From Rebecca billardiae RCC1528 (taxonomy: Eukaryota; Protista; Haptophyta), in NCBI GenBank assembly GCA_965240325.2, contig OZ251237.1, positions 1,364,001 through 1,428,000 of the forward strand: a stretch of DNA of 64,000 nucleotides, read 5' to 3'. The notes under the pieces were generated by a model. That model searched no databases. It was not told the DNA's origin and saw only the letters and a program-made list of their open reading frames with translations. Position numbers and translations under genes: made by a program. This document shows, piece by piece, positions 9,759 to 28,974 of this stretch (position 1 is its first letter; the number at the start of each line of letters is the position of its first letter).

Positions 9759-13009
<3,251 letters not shown>

Positions 13010-13278
13010 CGTTCGAAAGCGCCCGCGCTGGGCGAGGCGAGCTGACGGTTGGCCCGTCACGTTGGCACTGCACGAGTGCTGCAACTTGGCGTGCGTCGCG
13101 CGCGCAGCCCACCCGCTGCGGGCCCGGACTTTCAGCCCGCTCCGCGGGCCGCTCGCGTCGCCCGGATTCCTCCTTGCCGCGCGTCCGCCCTCAGACGGTG
13201 GCGGCGGTGCGCACCCCGGCGACGCCCGCGCGCACACACGGCAGGCGCAATCCAAGCGCGCAGGCGGAGGGCGGCGAG

Positions 13279-16072: not shown

Positions 16073-16115
<43 letters not shown>

Positions 16116-17517
16116 GCGCGGCCCTGGCGGCGTGGACACTGGCTTCTACGCGCTGATCGGCGCGGCAGCCATGCTGGGGGGCGTCACGCGGATGACCATC
16201 TCGCTCGTCGTGATCATCTGCGAGATCTCGAACGACGCGGGCGCGCTGCTGCCGCTGATGGCGGCGATCCTGACGGCGAAGGTCGTCGCCGACTTCTTCA
16301 ACCCCTCGCTCTACGACGCGGCGATGGCGCTCGCCGGCTTCCCATTCCTCGAGGATGAGCCGCCACGGCGCGCGGCCGACGCGCTCTGCGCTGCGGACGT
16401 GATGACAAGCGGTGTGCGCGCGCTGCCGACGGTGGTGCGCGCGCGCGAGGCGGCGGAGGCGCTGCGCGAGAGCGCACACGCCGCGCTGCCGGTGATCGAG
16501 CGCGGACGCGCCGGCCACGGCCGCACGCTCGTCGGCTCCGTCCGCCGGTACGAGCTGTCAGCGCTGCTGCGCGCGCGCGCGTTTGTCAGGCCGGGCTCGG
16601 GCGCGCCGCCGCTGCGCTCGCGCACGGAGAGCGTCGGCAGCGCGGCCGGCGGCGGCGGCGGCGCGGGGAAGGGGAAGGGGTCGCAGCCGCCCGAGCTGCT
16701 CGACCAGCTGTCCGCCGGCAGCGCCTCCGCCGACGGCGCGCACGCGGGCTGCGCGCCCGCGCGCCCGCTGCCGCCGCCGACGCCGCCCCTCGCCACCGCC
16801 GCGTCGCCGCCGCCGTCGCCGCCCGCGCCGCCCGCGCGCGCCGCCGCGCACGCCGAGCCGGAGTGGGTCGCCGACGCCAGCCGGGTGAGCCTCGCCGAGC
16901 TCGTCGCGGAGCGGCGCCGGCTGCGCGCGCCGGCCTCCTCCTCCACCGGCGGCGGGTACTCGTTCGGCGGCGGCGGCGGCAGCGGCGCAAACAGCCGGCG
17001 CGCGTCGGCCGATCGCGCGGCCGTGTCAGCGGCGGACGGCGCGGACTCGGCGCGCGGCGCCGCCCTGCCTTCCCTCGACGCGGAGGACGCGGAGTGGTGC
17101 CTCGACCTGCGCGCGATCATGGAGCTCGCGCCGATGACCGTGCTCCCCGCCACCCCGCTCGAGCGCGTGCACCGCCACTTCCGCTCGATGGGCCTGCGCC
17201 ACCTGTTTGTGGTCGACCGCCGGCACCGGCTGCTCGGCGTCGTCACGCGCAAGGAGCTGCTGCCGCAGGTGCTCGAGCAGGAGGCGGAGGACGCGACGCA
17301 CCCGCGCGCGCACGGCGCGCTGGCGTACGACGCGCAGCAGATGCGCACGCCGGACAAGCAGCGCTCGACGCACGGCCCCTCGCCCGCCACCTCGCCCGGC
17401 CGCGCGCCGCGCGACGGCTTCGGCGCCGCCGCCGCTAACGAGTCAGATGGCCGTGACAACGGCGGCGGCGCGGAGGGCGCGGGCCCGTCGCAGATGCCGT
17501 CATCGGCCACCTGCTAG
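13279..17517 (+). CDS. CLC: CLC-family Cl-/H+ antiporter (CLC-6/7-like) with CBS domains; introns 14100-14276 and 14860-15138
   Basis: Spliced ESYDY motif, GSGIP, GREGP (gating Glu), GAAAGVAAAFNAPIGGVLFALEE, PSGLFVP, GGVTRMTISL, C-terminal CBS (FRSMGLRHLFVVD). Confidence 0.93.
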
Positions 17518-17596
17518 TGCCTAGTGCTAGTGCCTAGTGCTGACGATGTACTGCTAGCATGAAGAGCATACAGTCGTGGGTCGTTGCGCATCATGA

Positions 17597-20221
17597 ATGC
17601 TGCAGGTCTGGAGTGCCGAGGCTTGGTATGGTATGGGCCGAATAAAAAGGGGCGCGATTCCTGGGGATTCCTGGCGCGTCCCGCCGGTCGACGTAGAACG
17701 TAGAGCCCCGCTGGCCGCGCGTCAGGGCGACGGGACGCGCTGCTGGTCGATGGTATCGACTGCGCCACCCCCAACGCCCCTGCCGCGCGCGCGCCTCGCG
17801 CTGGTGGCATGGATGAACGTGAGCGAGGCGCTCGTGCACACGATGTGTCTCCCATTCGCCCCCTTCATGGTGCAGCACCTCATCGGAGCCGACGACGCGG
17901 ATCCTCGCATCGCGTACCTCCAAGGCTGTCTGGTCGCGGCGGCCAGCCTGGCCGAGTTCGTTGGCAGCTACCCGCTAGGCTTGCTGAGCGACCTGATCGG
18001 CCGGCGGCCGGTCATTCTGCTGGCCTTATTCGCGACCACCATTTGCACGCCGGCGTTTGGCTTCGCCACCTCGTACGAGATGGCTTTTGCTGCCCGCACA
18101 GTGCGCGGGCTGTGCGCGGCCGTCACGGGTACGACCAAGACGTACCTGTACGAGATCACCGACAGCTCGAATCGCGACCGCGCGTTTAGCGTGCTGATGG
18201 CATGCTACGGCTTCGCGCTGTGCATCGGGCCGACCCTCGGCGGCGCGCTCTCCGAGCCTGCCCGCACGTGGCCGTCCACCTTCCCCAATGGCTCTCTCTT
18301 CGACCGCCACCCGTACGCGCTCCCGTGCGTCGTCGTCGCGGCGTGCAGCGGGGCGGCGGGCGTGTGCGCGTGGTTCATGCTCGCCGAGACCGTGCACCGA
18401 CGCTCCCCGTCGATCTGCTGCCTCGACACCCAGCCGCTCTTGGACAAGGGCGCCGCGGACAGCGAGTCTGGCGATGCCTCGAAGCAGTCGGCTCAGGGTG
18501 GGTCTGACGCGAGCGGCAGTGCCGCTGGGCGTGGCGGCAGCAGCGCACTCGGCCGCACCGCCTGGCTGGCCGCGGTGCTGTACGGGATGGTCGCGCTGGT
18601 GGTGGAGATGATACAGGTGCTGTGGGTGCTGTGGGCCAAGCTGCCCCTCGCCCAGCGCGGCCCGCACCTTGACGTGCGCACGATCGGCCTCTTGCAGGCG
18701 GTCGGAGGCGTGGGCATGCTCTTCTCGCAGGCGGTCCTCTACCCGCATGCCGTGCGCGCGTTCGGGCTCAGCCAGACGTTCCGCCTGGGCTGGGTCGGGC
18801 CGGTCGTCGCGTATGTGGCGATCCCCTTCACGGTCCAGCTCGCTCCGCCCGAGGGCGGGTGCTGGCCCTCCCCGTTCTGCGCGTTGCTGGCGGTGCTCGA
18901 GCTGCTGCAGATGGCAAGCAGCTCGGCGCTCTTCACCTGCGTCATCCTGATGCTCTCCAACTCGGTGCCGAGCGGAGAGCTGGGAGCCGCGAACGGAGTG
19001 GGGCAGTCGATCGCGTCCATGGCGCGCTTCGCCGCGCCGCTCTTCAGCGCTACTCTCGTCGGCCAGCTCGCCTCTGGCGCGCCTCCGCTCGACGTGCGGC
19101 TTGCCTTCTTTGCGGTGGCAGCGTTCGCGCTGCTCTCGGTGGCACTCTCGTACGCGCTGCCGCGCTCGATCGACCACGCGTTCGACGGCGCGGCATCGCT
19201 CGCTGGGGCGCCCGCGTCGCGGCGGCCGCACGACCCGAATCGTTTGCCAGCCGCGATCGAGCAGCGCATGATGTGCGCGCCGCTGGGGGCCGCTGACCCC
19301 CATGCCGTCGCGCTCGCGCGTGAGCGGCTCTCGGCGGAAGGGATGGTTGTGATCGACAAGGGCGCCGCGTTCTCCTCAGCGGACGAAGTGCGCGCATGGA
19401 GCGCGGCTCTTTTCTCGGCTGAGTATGACTACACTCGCAGCGGCGCGGCCGCTCGCGACAACCTGGGCGGCGGCGTGCTCGCCACCACCGGCAAGGCCGA
19501 GCGTTCGGCCGTTCAGCTTCTCGAGCACCCCGAGATGAGCTACGAGCGTGAGTACCCTGGGAAGCTGCTCTTTGCGTGCTTCGAGTGTCCGCCCGACAAG
19601 GCGCAGACGACGCTGCTCGAGACCAGCGCTCTGACGCGCGCGCTGCGAGGGACAGCGCTCTGGCACAAGCTCGAGGCGCACGGCCTCACCTACCACTTCA
19701 AGTACTACTCTGCGGACGAGGTCGGTCCAGGCGGCCCGCCGCCAGTCCTGCGCCCGTGGCAGGACTTCTTCGGAGTGCGCACGCGCGCTGAGCTCGAGGC
19801 GGAGCTCGGGCGGCGGCGCATGCGCGCAGAGTGGCTCCAGGGCGAGGCCGGTGTGGTGCGTGTCTCACAGACCCTGCCTGCCTTCGAGCTGGACGACCAG
19901 GGGGACTTGCGTGTGCACTTCACCCTCGCCGTTCACGGCTGCAAGTTCGACCCTGACCCCGCGTGGAAAGGCGTGGCGCACATCGACAGGCCGTATCACT
20001 TCACGCTGGGGGACGGCGCCGAGCTGACGCACGCAGAGCTGGAGCTTGTAAGAGGCATGTACGACACGCACCGCGTGCTGCTGCCGTGGGTGCCCGGCAG
20101 GCTTGTCGTGCTTGACAACCAGCGCTGGATGCACGGCCGTGTCGCTTTTGCACTCGAACCACACGAGACGCGCAAGATCGGCGTCTGCACAGGGGAGAAG
20201 CGCACACGGCGCCTCGTATGA
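17597..20221 (+). CDS. Fusion of an MFS transporter (DHA1/ZIFL-like) with a C-terminal TauD/TfdA-type Fe(II)/2-oxoglutarate dioxygenase; likely start 17750
   Basis: MFS motif A GLLSDLIGRRPV, GPTLGGAL, ELGAANGVGQSIASMARFAAP. With no stop in between, HPEMSY...PGKLLFAC and W.PGRLVVLDNQRWMHGR follow (HxE...H facial triad), about 19320-20221. Confidence 0.85.
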   Translation: MLQVWSAEAWYGMGRIKRGAIPGDSWRVPPVDVERRAPLAARQGDGTRCWSMVSTAPPPTPLPRARLALVAWMNVSEALVHTMCLPFAPFMVQHLIGADDADPRIAYLQGCLVAAASLAEFVGSYPLGLLSDLIGRRPVILLALFATTICTPAFGFATSYEMAFAARTVRGLCAAVTGTTKTYLYEITDSSNRDRAFSVLMACYGFALCIGPTLGGALSEPARTWPSTFPNGSLFDRHPYALPCVVVAACSGAAGVCAWFMLAETVHRRSPSICCLDTQPLLDKGAADSESGDASKQSAQGGSDASGSAAGRGGSSALGRTAWLAAVLYGMVALVVEMIQVLWVLWAKLPLAQRGPHLDVRTIGLLQAVGGVGMLFSQAVLYPHAVRAFGLSQTFRLGWVGPVVAYVAIPFTVQLAPPEGGCWPSPFCALLAVLELLQMASSSALFTCVILMLSNSVPSGELGAANGVGQSIASMARFAAPLFSATLVGQLASGAPPLDVRLAFFAVAAFALLSVALSYALPRSIDHAFDGAASLAGAPASRRPHDPNRLPAAIEQRMMCAPLGAADPHAVALARERLSAEGMVVIDKGAAFSSADEVRAWSAALFSAEYDYTRSGAAARDNLGGGVLATTGKAERSAVQLLEHPEMSYEREYPGKLLFACFECPPDKAQTTLLETSALTRALRGTALWHKLEAHGLTYHFKYYSADEVGPGGPPPVLRPWQDFFGVRTRAELEAELGRRRMRAEWLQGEAGVVRVSQTLPAFELDDQGDLRVHFTLAVHGCKFDPDPAWKGVAHIDRPYHFTLGDGAELTHAELELVRGMYDTHRVLLPWVPGRLVVLDNQRWMHGRVAFALEPHETRKIGVCTGEKRTRRLV

Positions 20222-20347
20222 TTTGTAGCTAGTAGTATATATATGCCTCTGGGATGAGCCCACTAGTAGTGGCTATGAAGCCTGCTATATATAAGACTAA
20301 TTTTACTATTTCAATATATATATATATATATATTATGTGACACTGTA

Positions 20348-20395
20348 ATCTCGCCTGCCTGAGCTGTGTGCGTCTCTTATTCTGAGTAAACTGTA
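20348..20395 (-). repeat. Short dispersed family C fragment (TA-CAGTTTACT...AGACGCACACAGCTCAGGCAGGCGAGAT)
   Basis: Other copies at 1160-1200, 52962-53040 and 53585-53690. Confidence 0.7.
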
Positions 20396-20476
20396 GCTGC
20401 GCGCACGGATGCGACGTGCGTGGCTCCCAGACCCAGCACCAGCACAGTCGAGCGACGGCGCCGCCGCGCGCGGCCC

Positions 20477-22237
20477 TCACCACAGGCTCTGGCCGCCCTC
20501 GATCACGAGGTTGTGTCCCACCATGTACGAGGACGCGTCGGACGCGAGGTACACGACCGCCGCCTGCAAGTCCGTCACCTGCGCTAGCCGCCCGGCCGGG
20601 ATCTGCTCGAGCCAAGTGGCGGCAAGCTTGTTGAGTGCGGGGTTGTCCCAGATCAGGGGGGTGTCCACAATGCCAGGCGAGATGCAGTTGACGTTCAGGC
20701 CGCGCGACGCCCACTCGCACGCGAGAGACTGCGTCAGCTTGACCACGGCCGCCTTGGACGCGTTGTACGCCGCCTGCTTCTGCGGGTGCGGCACGAGCAG
20801 CGACGCCATCGACGCCGTGTTGATGATCTTGCCGCTGCCGCGCGCGAGCATGTGCCGCGCCTCGTGCTGGCAGCAGAGGAAGACGCCGCGTGTGTTGAGC
20901 GCGAACGTGAGGTCCCAGTCGGCGACGGGCGTGTCCTCGGCGGCAGAGTTCTTGTTCACGCCCGCGTTGTTCACCGCGATGTCGAGGGCGCCCTTCCACG
21001 CCACCGCCGCGTCGACCATCGCCTTGACGCTCCCCTCGTCCGCGCAGTCGGCGCGCACCGCCATCGCCTCTGCGCCCTTTGAGACCAGCTCGGCGGCCAC
21101 CGCGTCCGCACGCGCCTGGTCCAGGTCGGCGACGGCGACGGCGGCGCCCGCCTCGGCGAGCGCGTGCGCGAAGGCGCGGCCGATGCCCTGTCCGCCGCCG
21201 GTCACGAGGGCCGTCTTGCCGCTCAGCTTGAGGCGGTCGAGGATGCGCGCGCCCCCCACGCCTCGCGTCACCTCGTCCGGGCCGGCTGCGCCGCTGGGCT
21301 GCGGCGGCGGCGCAGGGGCCGCCGCCGGCACGGGCGCCGCGGCAACCTCGGCGGTGGGCACCGGCGCCGGCGGCGGTGGCGCCGCGCCCTTCAGCCGCAC
21401 GATCGTGATCCCGTCGCGAAGCGGCAGCGTGACGATCTCGACGCGCGCGTCCGCCCTCACCATCTTGTTGAACTCGCGCAGCGCCTCGCCGCCCGCGTTC
21501 CAGCTGTGCGGGTCGTGCGCGGCGCGGCCGAGGTAGGGCACGCCCTTGAAGAGGACGTTGTCGATCACGATCACGCCGCCCGGCGCGAGCAGCCCACGCG
21601 AGAGCACCGTCTCGTAGTACGCCGCGTACGAGCCCTTGTCCGCGTCGATGAACACCATGTCAAGCGGCTGCGCCTGCGGCCACGCGCGCAGCGTCTCGAG
21701 CGCGTCGCCGATGCGCACGCGGATCTTGTGCCCGTGGGGCGACTTGTCGAAGATGGGGCGGGCAAAGGCCTCAAGGAACGGGTCCACCTCGCACGAGATC
21801 ACCTCGCCGTCCTCGGGCAGCGCCTCGGCGATCGTGAGCGCGCCGTAGCCGGTGAACATGCCGACCTCGAGCACGCGCCGGGCCTTGAGCATGTACGCAA
21901 ACATGGCGAGCGTCTTGGCCTCGACGATGTCCGTGGTCCACCGCTCGGAGAAGCGGAACACCGTCTTGCCCTGCGCGTGCAGCTCGTCCCACGGCGCGCC
22001 GCGCGTCTTCCGCTCGAGCTCGGCCGCCTCGGGTGACGGCGCAGACGTGCACTCGACCAGGTACTCGTCCAGGCCACGCGAGAGGCTGGCCGCCTCGTCG
22101 AGCAGGGCGGTGAGCCGCTCGTTGGGCGTGTCAGGCACGAACGCGACCTCCTGCGCGGACGGTGGCGCGGACGACTCCGCTTTCGCCGCAGCGGCGCCGT
22201 GCGCGCGAATGCCCGCGACCGAGCTGGCCTGCTCCAT
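20477..22237 (-). CDS. MT-Ox: Bifunctional O-methyltransferase / NAD-dependent oxidoreductase (MT-Ox, gadusol synthase type): MysB-like MT domain plus classical SDR
   Basis: MT domain: LDEYLVECTS, VLEVGMFTGYGALTIAEALPEDG, CEVDPF, SPHGHKI, DMVFIDADK, IDNVL. Pro/Ala linker. SDR: TGGGQGIG, NNAG, IINTASMASLLVPHPQKQAAYNASK, ending HNLVIEGGQSLW as I recall for fish MT-Ox. Start placed at MEQASS; the ORF extends to 22351. Confidence 0.9.
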   Translation of the reverse strand: MEQASSVAGIRAHGAAAAKAESSAPPSAQEVAFVPDTPNERLTALLDEAASLSRGLDEYLVECTSAPSPEAAELERKTRGAPWDELHAQGKTVFRFSERWTTDIVEAKTLAMFAYMLKARRVLEVGMFTGYGALTIAEALPEDGEVISCEVDPFLEAFARPIFDKSPHGHKIRVRIGDALETLRAWPQAQPLDMVFIDADKGSYAAYYETVLSRGLLAPGGVIVIDNVLFKGVPYLGRAAHDPHSWNAGGEALREFNKMVRADARVEIVTLPLRDGITIVRLKGAAPPPPAPVPTAEVAAAPVPAAAPAPPPQPSGAAGPDEVTRGVGGARILDRLKLSGKTALVTGGGQGIGRAFAHALAEAGAAVAVADLDQARADAVAAELVSKGAEAMAVRADCADEGSVKAMVDAAVAWKGALDIAVNNAGVNKNSAAEDTPVADWDLTFALNTRGVFLCCQHEARHMLARGSGKIINTASMASLLVPHPQKQAAYNASKAAVVKLTQSLACEWASRGLNVNCISPGIVDTPLIWDNPALNKLAATWLEQIPAGRLAQVTDLQAAVVYLASDASSYMVGHNLVIEGGQSLW

Positions 22238-22511
22238 GCCTTTGACTTGATTGCTCGTTGGCCGGCGATCAGCGAATTGATGAGAATGTACCTGATGAAC
22301 CTTCATCAATGTGTGCATCAACGCGTCTGACCTTCCTTTGATTCCGCGCATCCGCTACTTGATCCCTGCATGGGATGAAAAGCGGCGTGGTAATTATAAT
22401 AATAAACCATTCATTAATTAAATACCCCATAGTACGTTGAACGTGTACGGTATTTTCTCCGGACTGTCCATCCCGGGTCGGTGAACGTTCGCGCGATCAC
22501 GGAGGACGAAG
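22238..22511. promoter_or_regulatory. Putative bidirectional promoter between MT-Ox and EEVS
   Basis: About 274-bp divergent intergenic region with an AT-rich core (taattataataataaa, 22391-22420). Confidence 0.5.
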
Positions 22512-23945
22512 ATGGTGGGCCCCGCCACCTTCCAACTTGCCTGCGTGCTCCTTGCCGGCGTGCACTCGCCGCTGCACACCTCCACGCGCGTTACGGCGTT
22601 GCGCGGGCACGCCGACACGCTCGCGTTCTATGACGACGCCTGGCACGCCCACGCCGACCCATCAACCGTGCCGCCGCACGCCGTGCACTCGGCCGCGACG
22701 ATCAAGGAGGACTCGCTGCCGTCCTCCTCCTCGCCCGGGACCTCTACGACCGAGTGGGCCGTGCGCGCGCCGCTCACGTTCGAGTACCGCGTGATCGAAG
22801 CGCCGCGCCTCTTCCACCCCGACAACGACGCCCTGCTCTTCGGCCACCTCGCCCCCGGCTCGGCCGCGCGCGCGCGCGCGCGCGAGCAGCGGCAGCGGCG
22901 GTTGGTTGTGATCGACCAGACCGTCGACGAGCTGTTCGGCGACGGGCTGCGCGCGTACCTCGAGGCTCGGCGCGTGGATCACCAGATTGTCGCACTGCCC
23001 ATGCTCGAGGAGAACAAGGACGTCGACCTCGTTCTCCAGGTCGCCGAGGCGATGAAGCGCTTTGAGCTGGCGAGGCGCGACGAGCCGGTGATCGCGATCG
23101 GCGGCGGCGTCTGCCTCGACGTGGTCGGCCTCGCTGCGACGCTCTTCCGGCGCGGCACGCCGTACATCCGCGTGCCCACGACGACGCTCTCGTACGTCGA
23201 CGCCTCGGTCGGCGCCAAGTCCGGCATCAACTTCATGGGCTCGAAGAACCGGCTGGGCGCGTACGTGCCGCCCGCGGCCGCGCTGCTTGACCCGAGCTTC
23301 CTGCGCACAGAGTCGGCGCGTGGCGTCTCGTCGGGCCTCGCGGAGATGGCGAAGATGGCGCTGGTCAAGTCGCCCGAGCTGTTCGAGCTGCTCGAGGCGC
23401 ACGCCGAGCGCCTCGTCGCGCACCGCTTCCAGCCGCTCTCCGCGCGCGACGGCGTGCCCGGCCGCGTGCTCGGCCTGTCAGTCCGGCTGATGCTGGACGA
23501 GCTGGCGCCCAACCTGTGGGAGGCGTCCCTCGACAGGCTGGTCGACTTTGGGCACGTGCTCGGGCAGGAGCTCGAGCTGCGCACGCTCGGCACGGAGCAC
23601 GAGCTGACGCACGGCGAGTCCGTCGGCGTGGACATGGCGTTCATGACCGTCCTCGCCGCCGTACGCGCGCAGATCAGCGAGGCGCAGCGTGACCGCATCC
23701 TGGCGATGCTGCGCCGCTGCGCCATCCCGGTGTGCAGTGCGATGGTCGACGAGGCGCTCGTGCTCAGCGCGATGGTCGAGCGCCGCGCGCAGAGCATGGG
23801 ACAACGACTGCCACTCCCCGTCGGGGTGGGCAAGGCACGCATCTTCAACGACGTGAGCGAGGACGAGCTGCTTGAGGCACACCGCGTCTGGACCGACCTC
23901 TGCTGCACGCGACCGCCACAGGCGACACCGGCGACGCGCCGTTAG
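22512..23945 (+). CDS. EEVS: Sedoheptulose-7-phosphate cyclase, 2-epi-5-epi-valiolone synthase (EEVS) type, with an N-terminal signal/transit-like extension
   Basis: DHQS-fold motifs AIGGGVCLDVVG, RRGTPYIRVPTT, DASVGAK, KNRLGAY, GLAEMAK, LTHGE. EEVS-type fingerprint MLDELAPNLWE...RLVDFGH, whereas DDGS/MysA reads MLELExPNLHE...RVIAYGH. Confidence 0.9.
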   Translation: MVGPATFQLACVLLAGVHSPLHTSTRVTALRGHADTLAFYDDAWHAHADPSTVPPHAVHSAATIKEDSLPSSSSPGTSTTEWAVRAPLTFEYRVIEAPRLFHPDNDALLFGHLAPGSAARARAREQRQRRLVVIDQTVDELFGDGLRAYLEARRVDHQIVALPMLEENKDVDLVLQVAEAMKRFELARRDEPVIAIGGGVCLDVVGLAATLFRRGTPYIRVPTTTLSYVDASVGAKSGINFMGSKNRLGAYVPPAAALLDPSFLRTESARGVSSGLAEMAKMALVKSPELFELLEAHAERLVAHRFQPLSARDGVPGRVLGLSVRLMLDELAPNLWEASLDRLVDFGHVLGQELELRTLGTEHELTHGESVGVDMAFMTVLAAVRAQISEAQRDRILAMLRRCAIPVCSAMVDEALVLSAMVERRAQSMGQRLPLPVGVGKARIFNDVSEDELLEAHRVWTDLCCTRPPQATPATRR

Positions 23946-24321
23946 TTGGAGCGCGCGACCACGCGGCGAGGAGGGCGTGCCCATACGCATCGCACGGGTT
24001 CGATGCTGTACCTTTCTTAGATGACGGAATCAGATGAGGCGGCCGCTGCACGCGCCTTCATCCAGGCGTAGCTACGCCTGGATGAAGGCGCGTAGATGAC
24101 GAATACTGTACACCACCCGTCACCGTCGGGGGTCCGCCAGATGAAGTTGGGGACTGTCTTCGGTCTGACAGACCTCGGAACGGGAATCAGAGCAGAAGAG
24201 ACACCCTTGACAAGGGCCTTGCCCTTGAGTAGAGCATCAGCGGCTTCGTCAGTACAATACAATATTGATGAGTTCACCCCAGATTCACCCCGCCACTCCG
24301 CTCAGCCGACGCCACGTCACG

Positions 24322-25317
24322 ATGCTCTACGCTGTCACTGGCGCGAACGGCTTCATCGCCTCCCACGTGGTGAGCAAGCTGGTCGAGCAGGGCCACAAGG
24401 TGCGCGCAACGGTGCGCAAGCCCGACGACGAGGCCAAGCTCGCCCACCTCAAGTCGCTCGGCGCGCCGGTCGAGATCGTCGTGCTCGCCGACCTCACGTC
24501 CGCAGAAGAGGTGGCGCCCGCGCTCAAGGGCTGCGACGGGCTCTTCCACATGGCGGCGGTGCACCCGACGTACGGCTTCGAGGAGACGCCCGAAGGCGCC
24601 GATGCGATCATCGCCCTCGCGGTCGAGGGCACCAAGGCGGTGCTCAAGGCGGCGGCCGCCGCGGGCGTGAAGCGTGTCGTCCTCACGAGCTCACTCGCGG
24701 CCGTCGAGTGTGGCAACGACACGGGCGTGCTGACCGAGGCGACATGGTCAAGGGAGGAGGTGTACAACAGCTCAACATCGACGCAGTGGAAGACGCATCA
24801 CGCGTACGTCAAGTCCAAGACGCTGCAGGAGCGCGCCGCGCTCGCCGCCGCCGCCGAGCTCGGGCTCGACCTGCGCGTGATCGCGCCGGGCAACCTATGC
24901 ATCGGGCCAATCCTCAGTACACACATCAACGGCACGATGACGCGCGTGCGCGACGTGGTGCAGGGCTCAAACACGCTGAAGGGCTGCGCAGACCTCGGTG
25001 TAGTCCACGTCTCCGACGTCGCGCACGCGCATGTCGCCGCGATGACCACCGACTCCGCAAGCGGCCGTTACATCGTCGCGCAGAGCATGGTGCGGCTGGA
25101 GGACGTGTTCAGTGCGCTCAAGGAGCTCTGCCCGGACCGGCCGGTGGCGCCGATGACGAACATGGACTACGCGTCGGGCACGCCGGGCAAGGCGCGCGCG
25201 ATTGAGAGCCGCACCGAGGCTGAGCTGGGCGTGCAGTACGTGCCACTCAAGCAGACGCTCAAGGAGGCGGTCGACTCGATGGTCAGCAAGGGCTTCATCC
25301 AGGCCGCCGCCGCGTGA
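24322..25317 (+). CDS. Extended SDR: NAD(P)-dependent reductase/epimerase, dihydroflavonol-reductase / cinnamoyl-CoA-reductase-like
   Basis: VTGANGFIASHVV, VRATVR, FHMAA, KRVVLTSSLAAV, catalytic YVKSK, VHVSDVAHAHV, GRYIV. Confidence 0.88.
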   Translation: MLYAVTGANGFIASHVVSKLVEQGHKVRATVRKPDDEAKLAHLKSLGAPVEIVVLADLTSAEEVAPALKGCDGLFHMAAVHPTYGFEETPEGADAIIALAVEGTKAVLKAAAAAGVKRVVLTSSLAAVECGNDTGVLTEATWSREEVYNSSTSTQWKTHHAYVKSKTLQERAALAAAAELGLDLRVIAPGNLCIGPILSTHINGTMTRVRDVVQGSNTLKGCADLGVVHVSDVAHAHVAAMTTDSASGRYIVAQSMVRLEDVFSALKELCPDRPVAPMTNMDYASGTPGKARAIESRTEAELGVQYVPLKQTLKEAVDSMVSKGFIQAAAA

Positions 25318-25340
25318 AGACTGAATATAAGAACGCAGAA

Positions 25341-25510
25341 TATATATTAACGACGTGGTATGCAACGGGCAGGCGTCAGAGTCAGCAAGCTGTAGCAGCA
25401 GATCTTCGAGCAGCACGGAGACAAACACCGCGCCAGCGGCAGCAGGATCACTGAGTCACTATCAGCGCTCCTCACGCCGTCGTCCCGCCCCTCCCCCTCG
25501 GCCTCGTAGA
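25341..25510 (+). repeat. Short dispersed family A (TATATTAACGxCGTGGTATGCAACGGGCAGGCGTCAGAGTCAGCAAGCTGTAG...)
   Basis: Copies at 62540-62672 (+) and about 53897-54168 (-). Confidence 0.85.
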
Positions 25511-25685
25511 CGACGTAGTATACCGTCGTAGGGCCTGGGATCAGCTAGGCCTGCTCAAGGGCACGCCGCGCACGCCGGCGGCGCGTGGGCGCAAGCGCCA
25601 TCATCAGCGCGTGGGCGATCGCGGCAACAAACGACCTGATGATCAAAGATGCGCAAACGGCAACACAACTGACCCACACTACGCG

Positions 25686-25901
25686 ACGGCAATACAGCTG
25701 GACAAAGTATTGGGCCATCATCCACGGCAATACACCTGACACAAGTATTCGACGTTGGCAACAAGATTGACATCACGTGATGATTCCCAAACATGGAAAA
25801 CGGCAATACACCTGACCACGGTAGTCAAAACGTGCGTTTGGCAATACACCTGACTGACAGGACGGACCTGACCACGCTTTCCAAAACGGCAATACAGCTG
25901 A

Positions 25902-25949
<48 letters not shown>
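25686..25949. repeat. Irregular minisatellite (5-6 x GGCAATACA[C/G]CTGAC) followed by a (CT)n microsatellite
   Basis: Units near 25686, 25724, (25755 degenerate), 25800, 25839 and 25886. (CT)n at about 25905-25949. Confidence 0.85.
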
Positions 25950-25951
<2 letters not shown>

Positions 25952-26118
25952 TCGGATTATTACTCCTGCTAAGACTATAGGCTAAGGCTATGACAATTGT
26001 CAATCAGTCAGCACTCAGCAGCTGCAGACTGTAGCTACGGAGTACCGTATGATCGGGCCGGGCTGCGTGTAGCAGGCTGGGCACCACTCCTCGTCCAGCG
26101 ACCGCGGGCTGCGCATCG

Positions 26119-27600
26119 TCAGTCGCCGTTCTCCTCCGTCATCTTGCCGATGCACAGGTCGACCTTCGCCCAGCGGTTGCCCGACCACACGTTGCGTGCG
26201 AGCAACACGGGCACGTGTACGCAGTGCTGCGCGATGAATGGCAGCGGGTCAGCAGCGTCCCAGTACGCGTCCTTCTTGCTTGCCAAGATGTGCAGCGCTG
26301 CGCGCGCGCGCTCGAGCACCGAGAGCCCGCGCGGCGCGAGCACCTCGTAGTACAGATCGGCCAGCGTCCAGTTCACCTCCTCCGCGGCCGGCACCGGCTG
26401 CACCGCGTCCGCGGGCGCGTCCGCGTTGGCCGCCATCGCGCTCGGTTCCGCGAGCAGCGCGCGGCCAAAGTCGGCCATGTTGCGGTGGTACGAGGTGACG
26501 TTGGACGAGAGCCGTGGGTTGCACTCGATCGCGCGCGCCACGCCGTCCTCGCCGACGAAGAAGTCGATGCAGACGATGCCGCTCAGCTTGTACGTGCGCA
26601 CGAAAGCGCTCACCCAGTTGAGGATGGCCGAGTTGCCCGCGTGCGTGTAGTTGAAGCACGAGATTGAAGCCTGGTTGTCCGTGAAGGTGAGCACGCGCCC
26701 GTCAGTGCACAGCGCGCACGAGGAGTACTCGACGCCCTCGAGCACCCCCTGCACGAGCCACGGCGCCTCCGCGCTCACGGCGAGCCCCGAGACGTACGCG
26801 CGCAGCTGTTGCTCCGCACACGGCAGCTGGAAGAGGTCGAGCCTGCGCATCGGGTCGTAGTTGCACGACTTGAGCAGGTAGCGCTTGGGCGAGTGGCGCG
26901 GGAGAGCGGCGTTGAACGCGAGGATCTCGTCCATCGAGCGCATCCGCTGCGTGTCCGGCATGGGCAGCCCCGCCTCCTTCGCCTTCCGCGCGAACACGAC
27001 CTTGTCGTCGAGCGCGAGCACGTCCTGCTCACAGAGCGACCAGCTGCGCACGCCCGGCGGGAGGCGCGAAAAGGCGCGCGCCTCGTACCGGCTGGCGGAG
27101 GGCGAGGTGACCGGCACGACGAGACTTGCGCCCTCGCGCTCGACCAGCTCGCGGATCGCGCGCTCGAACGCCTCGGACTGCTGCTCGGGGACAGGCACCG
27201 TCACAAACCTGTCCACGTGCATGGAGAAGCGCGACGCCACCATCCAGTACTTGCGCGTCTCGACGAGGATGACGCGGCAGCCCGCGGCGCGGAGCGCGCG
27301 GCACATGACGAGCGACTTGGTCATCTTACCGCCCGTCACGATCGCCGTCTTGCCGTTGAGCGCCAGCGGGCGCTTGCGGGCGCGCGTGCGCAGCCACTCG
27401 AGCGCCGCGCCGACGATCGCAGCCGTCACGACAAGGGGCGCGAGCATGGCGAGGCAGCCGAGGCAGAGCAGAGACCACGCGCGGGGCTCAATCATGTCGC
27501 GCAGGGAGCGCGCATGCGTTGCCACCGGCGAAGCCTCGCCCTGCTGCGCGCGCAGCGCATCCCCGACTCCGCGCGGCTCGACTGTGCAGGGCAGGCACAT
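26119..27600 (-). CDS. mysC: ATP-grasp ligase MysC (mycosporine-glycine synthase type); start 27600 or 27495
   Basis: N-terminal hydrophobic segment, TGGKMTKS...GCRVILVETRKYW...RFS..VDRFVTVP, PVTSP, LDDK..F, YLLKS..YD..RRLDL..LP, AIECNPR, DPLPF, and C-terminal W.KVDLCIGKMTEENGD, all typical of cyanobacterial MysC. Confidence 0.92.
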   Translation of the reverse strand: MCLPCTVEPRGVGDALRAQQGEASPVATHARSLRDMIEPRAWSLLCLGCLAMLAPLVVTAAIVGAALEWLRTRARKRPLALNGKTAIVTGGKMTKSLVMCRALRAAGCRVILVETRKYWMVASRFSMHVDRFVTVPVPEQQSEAFERAIRELVEREGASLVVPVTSPSASRYEARAFSRLPPGVRSWSLCEQDVLALDDKVVFARKAKEAGLPMPDTQRMRSMDEILAFNAALPRHSPKRYLLKSCNYDPMRRLDLFQLPCAEQQLRAYVSGLAVSAEAPWLVQGVLEGVEYSSCALCTDGRVLTFTDNQASISCFNYTHAGNSAILNWVSAFVRTYKLSGIVCIDFFVGEDGVARAIECNPRLSSNVTSYHRNMADFGRALLAEPSAMAANADAPADAVQPVPAAEEVNWTLADLYYEVLAPRGLSVLERARAALHILASKKDAYWDAADPLPFIAQHCVHVPVLLARNVWSGNRWAKVDLCIGKMTEENGD

Positions 27601-27831
27601 CGTCGTCAGAATCGTCGGGAGACTTCGAGAATACTACTACAGTCTTACTACTAGGAATCATCTATCGATCGATATGAGGAATCCGAGCGCGCGGGAAAAG
27701 CTGGTACAAACGCGCGGATTCTCACGTCCTCGAGTCGCCCCGTGCCGTCCGGACAGGCCAGGGGAGAGACCGAGAGAGGGAGGACCACCCCAGTTCTCCA
27801 GGATCGTGATCCTTCCGCGCCGTGCGCGACG

Positions 27832-28974
27832 ATGCCAGCTGCCGAGGACAAGATGCGCGTGGTGCATCTGATGGGCTCCGCCGTGTCGGCGTACTACGAG
27901 AGCCTGAGCACATTCTACGCGCAGGGCTGCGTCGACGGCGCGCAGGACGAGCTGACACGCGCCCACTTTGACTTTGCGTTTGCGATCGTGCACGCGACCG
28001 CGGATGGGCCGCGCTGGTCGTTCCCAGCCGAGCTCTCCGAGAAGGCGATCGCGGCCGCGCCGCGTCTGACGCACGCGGAGGGTGTCCAATGCCTTGCCGC
28101 GATCGACGCCGACGTGTGCGTGCCGCACATGTTCTGCTACCCCGGCATGACCACCTATCGCGCCCTGCTCGACATGCTGGGCGTGCCGATCCTGGGTTGC
28201 CCGCCGGCGTGCATGGCGCTGGCGACGGACAAGTTCCAGACGCGCGCGGTGGTCGCGGCGGCGGGCGTGCGCGTGCCAACGGGCGAGCTCCTCCGCGCGG
28301 GCGAGCGCCCCAGCCTCGCGCTTCCCTTCGTGCTCAAGCCGTGCCGCGAGGACAATTCTATGGGCGTCTCGGTCGTGCGCCGGCCAGAGGAGCTCGACGC
28401 GGCGCTCGCCGAGGCGTTCCGCTTCGACGAGCGCGTGGTGTGCGAGCAGTTTGTGCCACCCGGCCGCGAGATCCGCTGCGCCGTGATCGAGGACGAGCAC
28501 GGCGAGCCCACGCGCGTGCTGCCGTGCCTCGAGTACTTTCTGAGCGAGGAGCACCCGATCCGCACGCCAGGGGACAAGCTGGCGAGCAGCGAGGACGGCA
28601 AGGTGACGGGGCTCGCGTCCGGAGCGCGCAAGTGCCCGGCGGAGCTGTCGGACGAGCTGCGCGCCAAGCTCGCGGATGCCACGATCCGCTCCCACCGCGC
28701 ACTGGGCTGTCGCGACTTCTCGCTCTTCGACTTCCGCGTCGACCCGGAGGGTGAGGTGTTTTTTCTCGAGGCGTGCCCGGTGTGCTCCTTCTCGCCAAAG
28801 AGCGTGATCGTCTCGCTGGCGGACGCGGCGGCCGACGCGGATGTGGCGCACCCGGCGCTCTTCCACACGCTGCTCCGCCGGGCAGCTGGACGAGGCCAGA
28901 AGGCCAAGCCCAAGGCCAAGCCAGACGAAAAGCCAGTGCAGGTCTTTGGCATGCATGCAGACTGTGCGCGGTAG
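27832..28974 (+). CDS. mysD: D-Ala-D-Ala-ligase-like MAA ligase MysD (shinorine/porphyra-334 synthase type)
   Basis: RVVHLMGSA...YESLS.FYAQGC, W.FP..LS, VPHMFCYPGMTTYRALLDMLGVP, AAAGVRVP.GELLR, KP..EDNSMGVS, GREIRC, ALGCRDFSLFDFRVDPEG..FFLEA, FSPKSVI. Confidence 0.92.
   Translation: MPAAEDKMRVVHLMGSAVSAYYESLSTFYAQGCVDGAQDELTRAHFDFAFAIVHATADGPRWSFPAELSEKAIAAAPRLTHAEGVQCLAAIDADVCVPHMFCYPGMTTYRALLDMLGVPILGCPPACMALATDKFQTRAVVAAAGVRVPTGELLRAGERPSLALPFVLKPCREDNSMGVSVVRRPEELDAALAEAFRFDERVVCEQFVPPGREIRCAVIEDEHGEPTRVLPCLEYFLSEEHPIRTPGDKLASSEDGKVTGLASGARKCPAELSDELRAKLADATIRSHRALGCRDFSLFDFRVDPEGEVFFLEACPVCSFSPKSVIVSLADAAADADVAHPALFHTLLRRAAGRGQKAKPKAKPDEKPVQVFGMHADCAR

What the first reader, a model, noticed from the sequence alone, without database searches (positions are those of the whole stretch)
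17597..28974. Natural hybrid gadusol x mycosporine sunscreen gene cluster in an algal nuclear genome
Seen: six contiguous single-ORF genes, MFS-TauD(+), MT-Ox(-), EEVS(+), DFR-like reductase(+), mysC(-), mysD(+). Established: canonical MAA clusters start with DDGS (MysA) and a stand-alone O-MT (MysB) to make 4-deoxygadusol, which MysC and MysD/MysE then conjugate to Gly and Ser/Thr. The gadusol pathway of fish, amphibians, reptiles and birds uses EEVS plus the fused MT-Ox and stops at gadusol, with no ligases. Here the gadusol front end is physically clustered with the MAA back end. Inference: the alga ligates amino acids onto gadusol itself to give hydroxylated MAAs, like the gadusporines I know only from engineered mixing of fish and bacterial genes. 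Alternatively it reaches 4-deoxygadusol by a new route, with extra tailoring and export genes. I do not know of this organisation being described as a native cluster.
Basis: partly seen in the sequence, partly recalled or inferred. Interest (0 to 1): 0.96.

Follow-up and report, generated by a model that had tools for sequence, protein, structure and literature searches.

The report
Algal gadusol–mycosporine hybrid sunscreen gene cluster
A red-plastid alga carries six adjacent intact genes that join the fish-type gadusol enzymes to the bacterial-type amino-acid ligases of mycosporine sunscreens; a similar natural hybrid was already predicted in green algae in 2020, so this is a richer new variant, not a first.

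Summary
- MFS-TauD fusion (+)
- MT-Ox (-)
- EEVS-type cyclase (+)
- CCR/DFR-like reductase (+; true frame 24322-25317)
- MysC (-)
- MysD (+)

The cyclase scores far closer to the EEVS ValA than to DDGS. It has the two mutagenesis-validated EEVS residues (Leu, Asp). The third fingerprint residue is Gln instead of His. MysD is 40-47% identical to cyanobacterial MysD. This includes the MysD of the characterised Nostoc linckia NIES-25 cluster.

A gadusol front end clustered with MAA ligases is real. However, Foflonker & Blaby-Haas (2020) already proposed this natural hybrid for green algae, and natural gadusol-core mycosporines (prasiolin, klebsormidins) are known.

New here:
- the red-plastid lineage
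- the presence of MysD
- a lineage-specific transporter-dioxygenase fusion
- a reductase that also sits beside MysC, MysD or MT-Ox on independent marine eukaryote-like contigs

Whether the product keeps the gadusol hydroxyl is untested. First-stage notes of this scan record a similar cluster on another piece of the same genome; I did not check it.

The parts
17597..20221 (+). MFS transporter-TauD/TfdA dioxygenase fusion ORF (874 codons; probable start M73 at 17813, giving 802 aa)
   Evidence: Pfam MFS_1, Sugar_tr and TauD in one ORF. A 99%-identical 802-aa product was called on a Logan contig colinear with 17259-20369. Hydrophobic segments run to about residue 526.
17813..19174 (+). MFS membrane domain (residues about 73-526)
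   Evidence: Pfam MFS_1 at residues 79-229. Kyte-Doolittle segments at residues 105-526.
19262..20221 (+). TauD/TfdA-type Fe(II)/2-oxoglutarate dioxygenase domain (residues about 556-874)
   Evidence: Pfam TauD at residues 631-864. HPE at 644-646 and HGR at 846-848 are intact. Best PDB match is the At3g21360 clavaminate-synthase-like protein, E 2.7e-12. Nearest Atlas clusters are SyrP-like TauD proteins.
20477..22351 (-). MT-Ox: O-methyltransferase fused to a classical SDR oxidoreductase (624 aa)
   Evidence: Pfam Methyltransf_3 at residues 139-319 and adh_short at 379-567. 68% identical to the Aureococcus MT-Ox gene that lies next to its EEVS. The MT domain is 42-48% identical to cyanobacterial MysB. 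SDR motifs are intact.
22352..22511 (.). 160-bp AT-richer (GC 0.475) divergent intergenic region between MT-Ox and EEVS
   Evidence: The same head-to-head arrangement is seen in Aureococcus (L002), a Tara contig (L011) and an ENA contig.
22512..23945 (+). EEVS-type sedoheptulose-7-phosphate cyclase (477 aa)
   Evidence: PDB ValA 4p53 scores 286 bits against 189 bits for DDGS 5tpr. Leu331, Asp345 and Gln427 sit at the ValA Leu267, Asp281 and His360 positions. Identity to mysA-position (DDGS-type) cyclases is 27-37%.
24322..25317 (+). CCR/DFR-like extended-SDR NAD(P)H reductase (331 aa)
   Evidence: Pfam Epimerase, 3Beta_HSD and NmrA. PDB cinnamoyl-CoA reductase 4r1s scores 155 bits and DFR 4qtz 142 bits. 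Homologs (40-57%) lie beside MysC, MysD, MT-Ox or their usual neighbours on L003, L007, L106, L107 and L110.
26119..27600 (-). MysC-type ATP-grasp ligase (493 aa) with a hydrophobic N-terminal segment (residues about 45-63)
   Evidence: NCBIfam PRK06849 at 229 bits. A eukaryotic clade at 40-55% identity and bacterial MysC at 32-40%. 28-38% identity to MysC inside the recovered MysD loci, most of them mysABCD. Hydropathy.
27601..27852 (.). 252-bp divergent intergenic region between MysC and MysD
   Evidence: The same divergent MysC/MysD pair occurs on L007, L008 and L107.
27853..28974 (+). MysD-type D-Ala-D-Ala-ligase-like ATP-grasp ligase (373 aa from the ATG; the ORF opens at GTG 27742)
   Evidence: Pfam Dala_Dala_lig_C. 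40-47% identity to MysD in 80 bacterial loci, most with mysA, mysB and mysC alongside, including Nostoc linckia NIES-25 plasmid1. True Ddl structures reach only 86 bits. Natural MysC-MysD fusions exist.

Best explanation
This is a native, intact biosynthetic gene cluster of a eukaryotic alga with a red-type complex plastid. Its closest named relative for EEVS and MT-Ox is the pelagophyte Aureococcus. It most likely makes a gadusol-derived, amino-acid-conjugated UV sunscreen.

Proposed route (all steps inferred from homology; none assayed):
1. EEVS cyclises sedoheptulose 7-phosphate to 2-epi-5-epi-valiolone.
2. The fused MT-Ox methylates and oxidises this to gadusol.
3. MysC, which appears to be membrane-anchored, uses ATP to attach a first amino acid, by analogy glycine.
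4. MysD attaches a second amino acid (Ser, Thr or Gly), giving an imino-type, disubstituted product.
5. The cytosol-facing TauD domain fused to the MFS transporter hydroxylates an amino-acid substituent. By analogy with MysI this would be the glycyl residue, releasing glyoxylate to give a palythine-type compound.
6. The MFS half then moves the product across a membrane.
7. The CCR/DFR-like NAD(P)H reductase is a conserved partner of the ligases, but its substrate is unknown.

My graded confidence:
- It is a functional gadusol/MAA-type sunscreen cluster: about 0.9.
- Gadusol is an on-pathway intermediate: about 0.7.
- The final product keeps the gadusol hydroxyl: about 0.5.
For: - Domain content and intact motifs.
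- The cyclase is EEVS-like: ValA 286 bits against DDGS 189 bits, with Leu and Asp at the two positions shown by mutagenesis to matter (PMC10666671).
- The window holds no DDGS-type cyclase.
- MT-Ox is 68% identical to the Aureococcus MT-Ox and lies in the same divergent pairing. Aureococcus EEVS and MT-Ox are reported as over 50% identical to the vertebrate gadusol enzymes (PMC4426668).
- MysD is 40-47% and MysC 28-38% identical to the genes of the recovered bacterial MysD loci, including the characterised N. linckia NIES-25 locus.
- MysC-MysD fusion proteins exist in both orders.
- Homologs of the reductase (40-57% identity) sit beside MysC, MysD, MT-Ox or their usual neighbours on L003, L007, L106, L107 and L110.
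- TauD-family genes occur in bacterial MAA clusters: MysI (PMC10510106) and an Erythrobacter locus.
- Codon usage is host-like.
- Bacterial MysC and MysD accept gadusol in engineered strains, and natural gadusol-core mycosporines exist in green algae that carry EEVS + MT-Ox + MysC-like clusters (PMC7826186).
Against: - No chemistry or enzyme assay was done.
- No RNA run could be listed. The only hint of expression is three 98-99.5%-identical gene-sized contigs of unknown library type.
- The third EEVS fingerprint residue (His360 of ValA) is Gln here. It is Asn, Gln, Leu or Phe across the recovered algal-type homologs. Animal EEVS match ValA at all 14 sites (PMC4426668).
- From my own knowledge, marine red-plastid phytoplankton are generally reported to make conventional 4-deoxygadusol MAAs.
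- Cyclases of this clade also occur fused to an O-MT without any Ox domain. The clade therefore need not always feed gadusol.
- The role of the conserved reductase is unexplained by a simple gadusol-plus-ligases scheme.
Confidence: 0.55

Rival explanations
1. The cluster makes conventional 4-deoxygadusol-core MAAs by a non-canonical route. EEVS and MT-Ox give gadusol or a close intermediate. The conserved CCR/DFR-like reductase, followed by a dehydration, then removes the extra oxygen before or after MysC acts. The product would be ordinary mycosporine-glycine, shinorine or palythine-type compounds.
For: The reductase is the one accessory gene repeatedly found with MysC, MysD or MT-Ox in eukaryote-like contigs. 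It is absent from the Aureococcus locus, which has only EEVS and MT-Ox. It is also absent from the bacterial MysD loci, whose mysA-position cyclases are DDGS-type by identity. That pattern fits a step needed only when an EEVS front end feeds the ligases. From my own knowledge, red-plastid phytoplankton are reported to contain standard MAAs.
Against: Oxidising with the Ox domain and then reducing again is chemically roundabout. The green-algal hybrid neighbourhoods lack such a reductase and are linked to gadusol-core products (PMC7826186). No precedent exists for a CCR/DFR-like enzyme acting on gadusol. The Ox domain is conserved and intact in the contig that also carries the reductase (L003, 76% identity).
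Confidence: 0.25
2. Two end-products are made by co-located genes. EEVS and MT-Ox make free gadusol as a final sunscreen or antioxidant, as in fish and probably Aureococcus. MysC and MysD act on 4-deoxygadusol supplied by a DDGS/O-MT pair elsewhere in the genome. The genes would be neighbours for co-regulation only.
For: The two divergent pairs (MT-Ox/EEVS and MysC/MysD) also occur separately elsewhere. Aureococcus L002 and Tara L011 have only the first pair. L005, L007 and L107 show MysC or MysC/MysD without EEVS within the sequence available.
Against: L003 and an ENA contig put MT-Ox, with EEVS on the ENA contig, within about 10 kb of MysC-like or reductase genes. The window holds no DDGS, though the rest of the genome could not be searched. 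The other contigs are short, so the absence of EEVS on them is weak evidence.
Confidence: 0.12
3. Chance juxtaposition, an assembly chimera or bacterial contamination: the genes are not a functional unit of the alga.
For: All six genes lack introns, and four have clear bacterial homologs. A 63%-identical cyclase sits on a bacterial-looking contig (L010).
Against: GC3 matches the neighbouring eukaryotic genes. The flanking genes are eukaryotic. Independent 98-99.5%-identical contigs reproduce three segments of the cluster. The pairings recur in other eukaryote-like contigs. All ORFs and catalytic motifs are intact.
Confidence: 0.03

Closest known systems
Green-algal putative MAA neighbourhood (EEVS, MT-Ox, MysC-like ATP-grasp, O-methyltransferase) of Klebsormidium nitens, Chromochloris zofingiensis and Coccomyxa subellipsoidea (Foflonker & Blaby-Haas 2020, PMC7826186)
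   Same: It is a natural clustering of a vertebrate-type EEVS and MT-Ox with a cyanobacterial-type MysC. The same prediction was made there: an MAA with a gadusol core, described as a natural counterpart of the gadusporines. It too is untested biochemically.
   Different: This cluster lies in a red-plastid, Aureococcus-like lineage, not a green alga. It adds MysD, so a disubstituted imino product is expected, plus a CCR/DFR-like reductase and an MFS-TauD fusion. It lacks the Methyltransf_2-type O-MT: no tblastn hit in the window at E<=0.01.
Vertebrate gadusol pathway (zebrafish EEVS + MT-Ox) and the adjacent EEVS/MT-Ox pair of Aureococcus anophagefferens (Osborn et al. 2015, PMC4426668)
   Same: An EEVS-type cyclase sits next to a fused methyltransferase-oxidoreductase. 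Identity to the Aureococcus genes is 64% (EEVS) and 68% (MT-Ox), with the same divergent arrangement.
   Different: Those loci stop at gadusol and have no ligases. No MysC, MysD or reductase lies within 10 kb in Aureococcus. [quoted passage not shown]
Cyanobacterial and actinobacterial mysABCD clusters, e.g. Nostoc linckia NIES-25 mysABCD+mysH and Nostoc punctiforme (PMC10666671)
   Same: MysC (28-38%) and MysD (40-47%) are clear homologs. The MT domain is 42-48% identical to MysB. A dioxygenase as tailoring enzyme has precedent in MysH (PhyH-type) and MysI (TauD/TfdA-type, PMC10510106).
   Different: Across the mysABCD loci recovered, the mysA-position cyclase is only 27-37% identical to the window cyclase. 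The one MysA whose fingerprint I checked (L012) reads Glu/Ala/Thr, the DDGS pattern. Their O-MT is stand-alone with no fused SDR. None has the CCR/DFR-like reductase or a transporter-dioxygenase fusion within 10 kb.
Engineered gadusporine pathway: zebrafish EEVS/MT-Ox combined with bacterial mysC/mysD (Osborn & Mahmud 2019, as cited in PMC7826186)
   Same: It has the same four core enzyme types and is the only setting in which gadusol-plus-amino-acid products from this enzyme set have been shown.
   Different: It is a synthetic combination in a heterologous host. Here the four genes are native neighbours, with two further tailoring or transport genes.

Membership tests
[quoted passage not shown] | DHQS-like fold with N- and C-terminal DHQ synthase domains | tested here: met
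   PF01761 E 5e-30 and PF24621 E 3.5e-18.
[quoted passage not shown] | Closer in sequence to a characterised EEVS than to a characterised DDGS | tested here: met
   ValA 4p53 at 286 bits (E 3.8e-84) against Anabaena DDGS 5tpr at 189 bits. Identity to mysA-position cyclases in bacterial MysD loci is 27-37%.
[quoted passage not shown] | Active-site residues Leu267 and Asp281 of ValA (Glu254 and Ala268 in DDGS), both validated by mutagenesis (PMC10666671) | tested here: met
   Leu331 and Asp345 in the window protein. The cyanobacterial MysA of L012 has Glu and Ala at these columns.
[quoted passage not shown] | [quoted passage not shown] | tested here: not met
   Gln427 here. The recovered algal-type homologs carry Asn (56), Gln (40), Leu (13) or Phe (12) at this column, and His only once. 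I could not check the other 11 fingerprint sites because no list of them was available.
[quoted passage not shown] | Converts sedoheptulose 7-phosphate to 2-epi-5-epi-valiolone | not testable with these tools
   This needs an enzyme assay.
MT-Ox (gadusol methyltransferase-oxidoreductase) | One polypeptide with an N-terminal SAM O-methyltransferase and a C-terminal NAD-dependent SDR | tested here: met
   Methyltransf_3 at residues 139-319 and adh_short at 379-567. TGGGQGIG, NNAG and YNASK are intact.
MT-Ox (gadusol methyltransferase-oxidoreductase) | Encoded next to the EEVS gene and orthologous to the algal/vertebrate MT-Ox | tested here: met
   A divergent pair 160 bp apart. 68% identity to the Aureococcus gene adjacent to its EEVS. 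I made no direct comparison with the zebrafish protein. Similarity of Aureococcus to vertebrates is taken from PMC4426668.
MysC (ATP-grasp, first amino-acid ligase of MAA pathways) | PRK06849-type ATP-grasp homologous to MysC genes inside mysABCD clusters | tested here: met
   PRK06849 E 1e-67, 229 bits, which is below NCBI's equivalog cut-off of 406. 28-38% identity at 191-271 bits to the MysC genes of the recovered bacterial MysD loci. A eukaryotic clade lies at 40-55%.
MysD (D-Ala-D-Ala-ligase-like second ligase of MAA pathways) | Ddl-like ATP-grasp that groups with MysD of mys clusters rather than with cell-wall Ddl | tested here: met
   40-47% identity, E 1e-77 to 1e-87, to MysD in 80 bacterial loci, including N. 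linckia NIES-25 and N. punctiforme NIES-2108. The best true Ddl structure reaches 86 bits. It pairs divergently with MysC here and on L007 and L107.
Canonical mysABCD MAA cluster | Starts with a DDGS (MysA) and a stand-alone O-MT (MysB) | tested here: not met
   The cyclase is EEVS-type and the O-MT is fused to an SDR. The window has no second cyclase.
Green-algal hybrid MAA neighbourhood (PMC7826186) | EEVS + MT-Ox + MysC-like ATP-grasp as neighbours | tested here: met
   All three lie within about 7 kb.
Green-algal hybrid MAA neighbourhood (PMC7826186) | A fourth member: a cyanobacterial-type O-methyltransferase (Methyltransf_2 type, as found beside MysC in L012) | tested here: not met
   The L012 O-MT gives no tblastn hit in the 64-kb window at E<=0.01.
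MysI-type TauD/TfdA dioxygenase of MAA clusters (PMC10510106) | TauD/TfdA-family Fe(II)/2OG dioxygenase with an intact His-x-Asp/Glu...His triad, encoded in an MAA cluster | tested here: met
   PF02668 E 1.5e-8. HPE and HGR are present. It lies in the cluster.
MysI-type TauD/TfdA dioxygenase of MAA clusters (PMC10510106) | Orthology to MysI, and conversion of a glycyl-MAA to a palythine | not tested
The nearest Atlas clusters are SyrP-like. The Erythrobacter TauD neighbour had no DNA available.

The most novel reading that the evidence does not exclude
Marine eukaryotic phytoplankton may share a widespread, undescribed MAA pathway. In it the EEVS/MT-Ox (gadusol) route, not DDGS, would be the entry point. 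A conserved CCR/DFR-like reductase, with further recurrent partners seen on related contigs (SnoaL-like, DCC1-like, a dedicated MFS), would reshape the ring before or after MysC and MysD act. This would explain how algae without DDGS make their MAAs. The window's cluster would be the most compact full example, and its transporter-dioxygenase fusion would couple the last tailoring step to transport.
Probability: 0.15. Interest if true: 0.8.

Novelty: new variant of a known kind. Interest (0 to 1): 0.55.

Why it matters
MAAs and gadusol are the main small-molecule UV sunscreens of aquatic life, and they are sought as environmentally benign sunscreen ingredients. How eukaryotic phytoplankton make them is largely inferred from cyanobacteria.

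This cluster gives a compact, intron-free set of six genes that can be expressed directly. Such expression would test three things:
- whether nature makes disubstituted, gadusol-core MAAs, which I know only from engineered strains
- what the conserved CCR/DFR-like reductase does
- whether a TauD domain fused to a transporter performs the palythine-type trimming step

It also extends the algal EEVS/MT-Ox distribution that bears on the proposed algal origin of the vertebrate gadusol genes.

Tried and rejected
- **Wrong-frame ORF.** The ATG ORF 24096-25205 was rejected as the reductase. It is Arg-rich, has no Pfam or NCBIfam hit and is in the wrong frame.
- **RNA evidence.** No RNA run could be listed. 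The three coded runs X1-X3 are low-depth environmental contig sets. Laid on 17450-23400, they gave only a few 151-nt pieces, which say nothing on expression, introns or the fusion transcript.
- **Logan contigs.** L001, L008 and L009 from ERR14847150 are gene-sized and colinear with the window. Their library type is unknown. One contig ends in a palindrome and another carries 145 unmatched nucleotides at its 5' end. I treat them as only suggestive of transcription.
- **Fusion conservation.** A search for the MFS-TauD fusion among proteins of 480-1530 aa found only the same-species copy. The fusion looks lineage-specific, but stand-alone TauD relatives were not searchable.
- **Shared promoter motif.** No k-mer of 8 or more bases is shared by three of the four upstream regions.
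- **Locus search.** The 14-sequence MysD alignment was too diverse for the locus search. A 6-sequence alignment worked.
- **Papers not held.** The Osborn 2017 papers with the full 14-site fingerprint (PMC5400686, PMC5553865) are not held. Only three sites could be scored.
- **Steps not taken.** I judged structure prediction unlikely to discriminate substrates and did not run it.

Full report
**1. What is in the sequence**

Pfam and NCBIfam identify them as follows.
- 17597-20221 (+): a major-facilitator transporter (MFS_1, Sugar_tr) continuing in the same frame into a TauD/TfdA dioxygenase domain.
- 20477-22351 (-): a Methyltransf_3 O-methyltransferase fused to a classical short-chain dehydrogenase.
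- 22512-23945 (+): a dehydroquinate-synthase-like sugar phosphate cyclase.
- 24322-25317 (+): an extended-SDR reductase (Epimerase/3Beta_HSD/NmrA).
- 26119-27600 (-): a PRK06849-type ATP-grasp enzyme.
- 27853-28974 (+): a D-Ala-D-Ala-ligase-like ATP-grasp enzyme.

One correction is needed. The longest ATG ORF in the reductase interval (24096-25205) is a wrong-frame, Arg-rich artefact of the high GC content. The reductase lies in the 24265-25317 frame.

Catalytic and cofactor motifs are intact in the Ox domain, the reductase and the TauD domain. None of the six needs an intron.

GC3 of the six genes (0.86-0.93) matches the surrounding genes (0.85-0.96). Those neighbours are plainly eukaryotic: CLC channel, protein kinase, BTB protein, Vms1-like release factor, mitochondrial carrier. 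The cluster is therefore native nuclear DNA, not contamination. Unchecked first-stage notes on other pieces of this genome describe red-type plastid features. That agrees with the closest named relative of the EEVS and MT-Ox genes, the pelagophyte Aureococcus.

**2. The front end is of the gadusol type**

- Against solved structures, the cyclase matches the EEVS ValA (4p53) at 286 bits and the Anabaena DDGS/MysA (5tpr) at 189 bits.
- The review PMC10666671 names three active-site differences between ValA and MysA: Leu267/Glu254, Asp281/Ala268 and His360/Thr347. The first two were confirmed by mutagenesis.
- Mapped through the ValA alignment, the window protein has Leu331, Asp345 and Gln427.
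- A cyanobacterial MysA taken from a mysABC locus (L012) shows Glu/Ala/Thr at the same columns and is 35% identical.
- All but one of the 125 aligned sequences (the window protein and its recovered algal-type homologs) keep Leu and Asp; one has His at the Asp column. At the third site they carry Asn, Gln, Leu or Phe. [quoted passage not shown]
- So the enzyme is EEVS-like, with a clade-wide departure at one site. Its product has not been assayed.
- The neighbouring MT-Ox gene is 68% identical to the Aureococcus MT-Ox, and the cyclase is 64% identical to the Aureococcus EEVS. The two genes sit in the same head-to-head arrangement there (L002), on a Tara contig (L011) and on an ENA contig.
- The MT domain is 42-48% identical to cyanobacterial MysB. 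MT-Ox can therefore be read as MysB plus an added oxidoreductase.

**3. The back end is genuine MysC/MysD**

- MysC has a eukaryotic clade of relatives at 40-55% identity, including Chromera velia. Cyanobacterial and actinobacterial MysC follow at 32-40%.
- A locus search with a MysD alignment returned 80 bacterial loci. About 67 of them carry mysA, mysB and mysC next to the MysD hit. They include Nostoc linckia NIES-25 plasmid1, the characterised mysABCD+mysH cluster, and N. punctiforme NIES-2108.
- The window's MysD is 40-47% identical to theirs and its MysC 28-38%. True D-Ala-D-Ala ligase structures reach only 86 bits.
- Fusion proteins MysC-MysD and MysD-MysC both exist in the 1.8-billion-protein library. 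This is an independent sign that the two act together.
- The divergent MysC/MysD pair recurs on a lagoon contig (L007), a JGI contig (L107) and a same-species contig (L008).

**4. The accessory genes**

*Reductase.*
- It is closest to cinnamoyl-CoA reductase (155 bits) and dihydroflavonol reductase (142 bits).
- It is not a bystander. A search of JGI metagenomes gave 19 homologs at 51-64% identity, most on roughly 1-kb contigs.
- Of the five contigs of 3.9 kb or more, three carry cluster partners. L107 has MysC(-)/MysD(+)/MFS/reductase. L106 has MFS/reductase plus two SnoaL-like genes. L110 has a DCC1-like gene plus the reductase.
- The Tara contig L003 has DCC1-like, MysC, MFS, reductase, EamA and MT-Ox. 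L007 has DCC1-like, SnoaL x2, reductase, MFS, MysD and MysC.
- None of the bacterial MysD loci has this reductase within the sequence fetched (up to 10 kb each side), and neither does the Aureococcus EEVS/MT-Ox locus.
- The reductase therefore tracks the combination of EEVS-type chemistry with ligases. Its substrate is unknown.

*TauD domain.*
- Precedents exist. MysI, a TauD/TfdA dioxygenase of cyanobacterial MAA clusters, is proposed to hydroxylate the glycyl residue and so give palythines (PMC10510106). An Erythrobacter MAG locus reads O-MT, 450-aa protein, MysD, DHQS-like, HAD, TauD.
- Its nearest Atlas clusters are SyrP-like amino-acid hydroxylases.

*The MFS-TauD fusion.*
- It was found only in this species.
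- Other eukaryotic clusters use an unrelated MFS or an EamA transporter.

**5. Mechanism**

The best-supported reading is as follows.
1. Sedoheptulose 7-phosphate is cyclised by EEVS to 2-epi-5-epi-valiolone.
2. MT-Ox converts this to gadusol.
3. MysC, then MysD, add amino acids.
4. The TauD domain and the reductase tailor the product.
5. The MFS half transports it.

Feasibility rests on two points from PMC7826186. Engineered strains combining vertebrate EEVS/MT-Ox with bacterial mysC/mysD gave gadusporines. Green algae with EEVS + MT-Ox + MysC-like neighbourhoods were linked there to the natural gadusol-core compounds prasiolin and klebsormidin.

The main rival is that the conserved reductase, plus a dehydration, takes the pathway back to the 4-deoxygadusol core, so that ordinary MAAs result. 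This fits the reductase's distribution. From my own knowledge, it also fits the standard MAAs usually reported from marine phytoplankton. It is chemically roundabout, however, and has no precedent.

A second rival is that free gadusol and MAAs are separate products of co-located genes. Its test is whether a DDGS exists elsewhere in the genome, which I could not search.

**6. Novelty**

PMC7826186 (2020) reported it for three green algae and drew the same inference. PMC4426668 (2015) had already noted adjacent EEVS/MT-Ox in Aureococcus and Coccomyxa.

Full-text searches for EEVS with MysC/MysD, for gadusporine, klebsormidin or prasiolin, and for mycosporine with pelagophyte found no description of a cluster with this gene set, and no experimental test of any algal hybrid.

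What is new is a variant:
- it lies in a red-plastid lineage
- it includes MysD
- it has a reductase that is conserved across several marine eukaryote-like contigs
- it has a lineage-specific transporter-dioxygenase fusion
- it lacks the green-algal O-MT

**7. Limits**

- No expression data could be obtained.
- The three near-identical Logan contigs are only suggestive of transcription.
- The organism's name was withheld.
- Only three of the 14 cyclase fingerprint sites could be scored, because the source papers are not held.
- The scan's own notes list a similar cluster on another piece of this genome. I did not examine it. It may be the other haplotype and may be the source of the 98-99.5%-identical contigs.

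Noticed in passing
L003, L004, L005, L006, L007, L106, L107, L110 (metagenome contigs): Other eukaryote-like MysC/reductase loci share a recurrent extra gene set that the window lacks. It comprises a roughly 600-aa DCC1-like protein, an MFS transporter of a family unrelated to the window's, two SnoaL-like (NTF2-fold) proteins and an EamA transporter. This suggests a wider, undescribed eukaryotic MAA gene neighbourhood. SnoaL/NTF2-fold enzymes include ring dehydratases, so they might act on the cyclitol ring.
   Followed up: partly
L010:411-1799 and flanks (ENA contig_3961, GC 0.54): A cyclase 63% identical to the window's EEVS sits on a bacterial-looking contig. Its genes are tightly packed on one strand: GT4 glycosyltransferase, PIG-L deacetylase and a carotenoid set (phytoene synthase, desaturases, lycopene cyclase). 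This hints at recent exchange of this EEVS clade between bacteria and algae.
   Followed up: no
Proteins P0034-P0089 (subset), P0087, P0056: The algal-type EEVS occurs in several fusion architectures in marine metatranscriptomes. These are O-methyltransferase(N)-EEVS(C) without an Ox domain (about ten proteins), EEVS-transaldolase (P0087; transaldolase makes the substrate sedoheptulose 7-phosphate) and EEVS-GST (P0056).
   Followed up: partly
Proteins P0297, P0299, P0306 (MysC-MysD) and P0320, P0386, P0401, P0403 (MysD-MysC): Natural single-chain fusions of the two MAA ligases exist in both domain orders.
   Followed up: partly
window 24059-24093: A perfect 35-bp palindrome (CTTCATCCAGGCGTAGC|TACGCCTGGATGAAG-type) lies about 115 bp downstream of the EEVS stop codon. 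The Logan contig L001 ends inside it and folds back.
   Followed up: no
window 10000-14000 (and 15980-16860): This stretch has 82-86% GC with long ORFs in all six frames and many CG-rich tandem arrays: (CG)n at 11525-11840, a perfect (CGC)32 at 12142-12238 and 24-36-bp units. It lies just upstream of a CLC chloride-channel gene (15121-17517). Its nature is unexplained.
   Followed up: partly
window 26119-27600 (-), residues about 45-63; window 22512-23945 (+), residues 1-80: MysC has a strongly hydrophobic N-terminal segment (Kyte-Doolittle 2.5), which suggests a membrane anchor. EEVS has a roughly 80-residue N-terminal extension, absent from ValA, that begins with a short hydrophobic stretch and may be a targeting presequence.
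   Followed up: no
JGI+NCBI contig of Erythrobacter sp. (no DNA available): A bacterial MAA-like operon reads O-MT, a 450-aa protein (MysC-like by position), MysD, an unusually long (611-aa) DHQS-like cyclase, a HAD hydrolase and a stand-alone TauD dioxygenase.
   Followed up: no
L009:1-145: The first 145 nt of the same-species Logan contig covering the MFS-TauD gene do not match the window upstream of 17259. This could be a structural difference between copies or strains, or a chimeric contig.
   Followed up: partly
another piece of the same genome (scan notes s1-341009, s1-341115): First-stage notes record a second EEVS/MT-Ox plus MAA-ligase cluster on a different assembly piece. It could be the alternative haplotype or a paralogous copy.
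   Followed up: no
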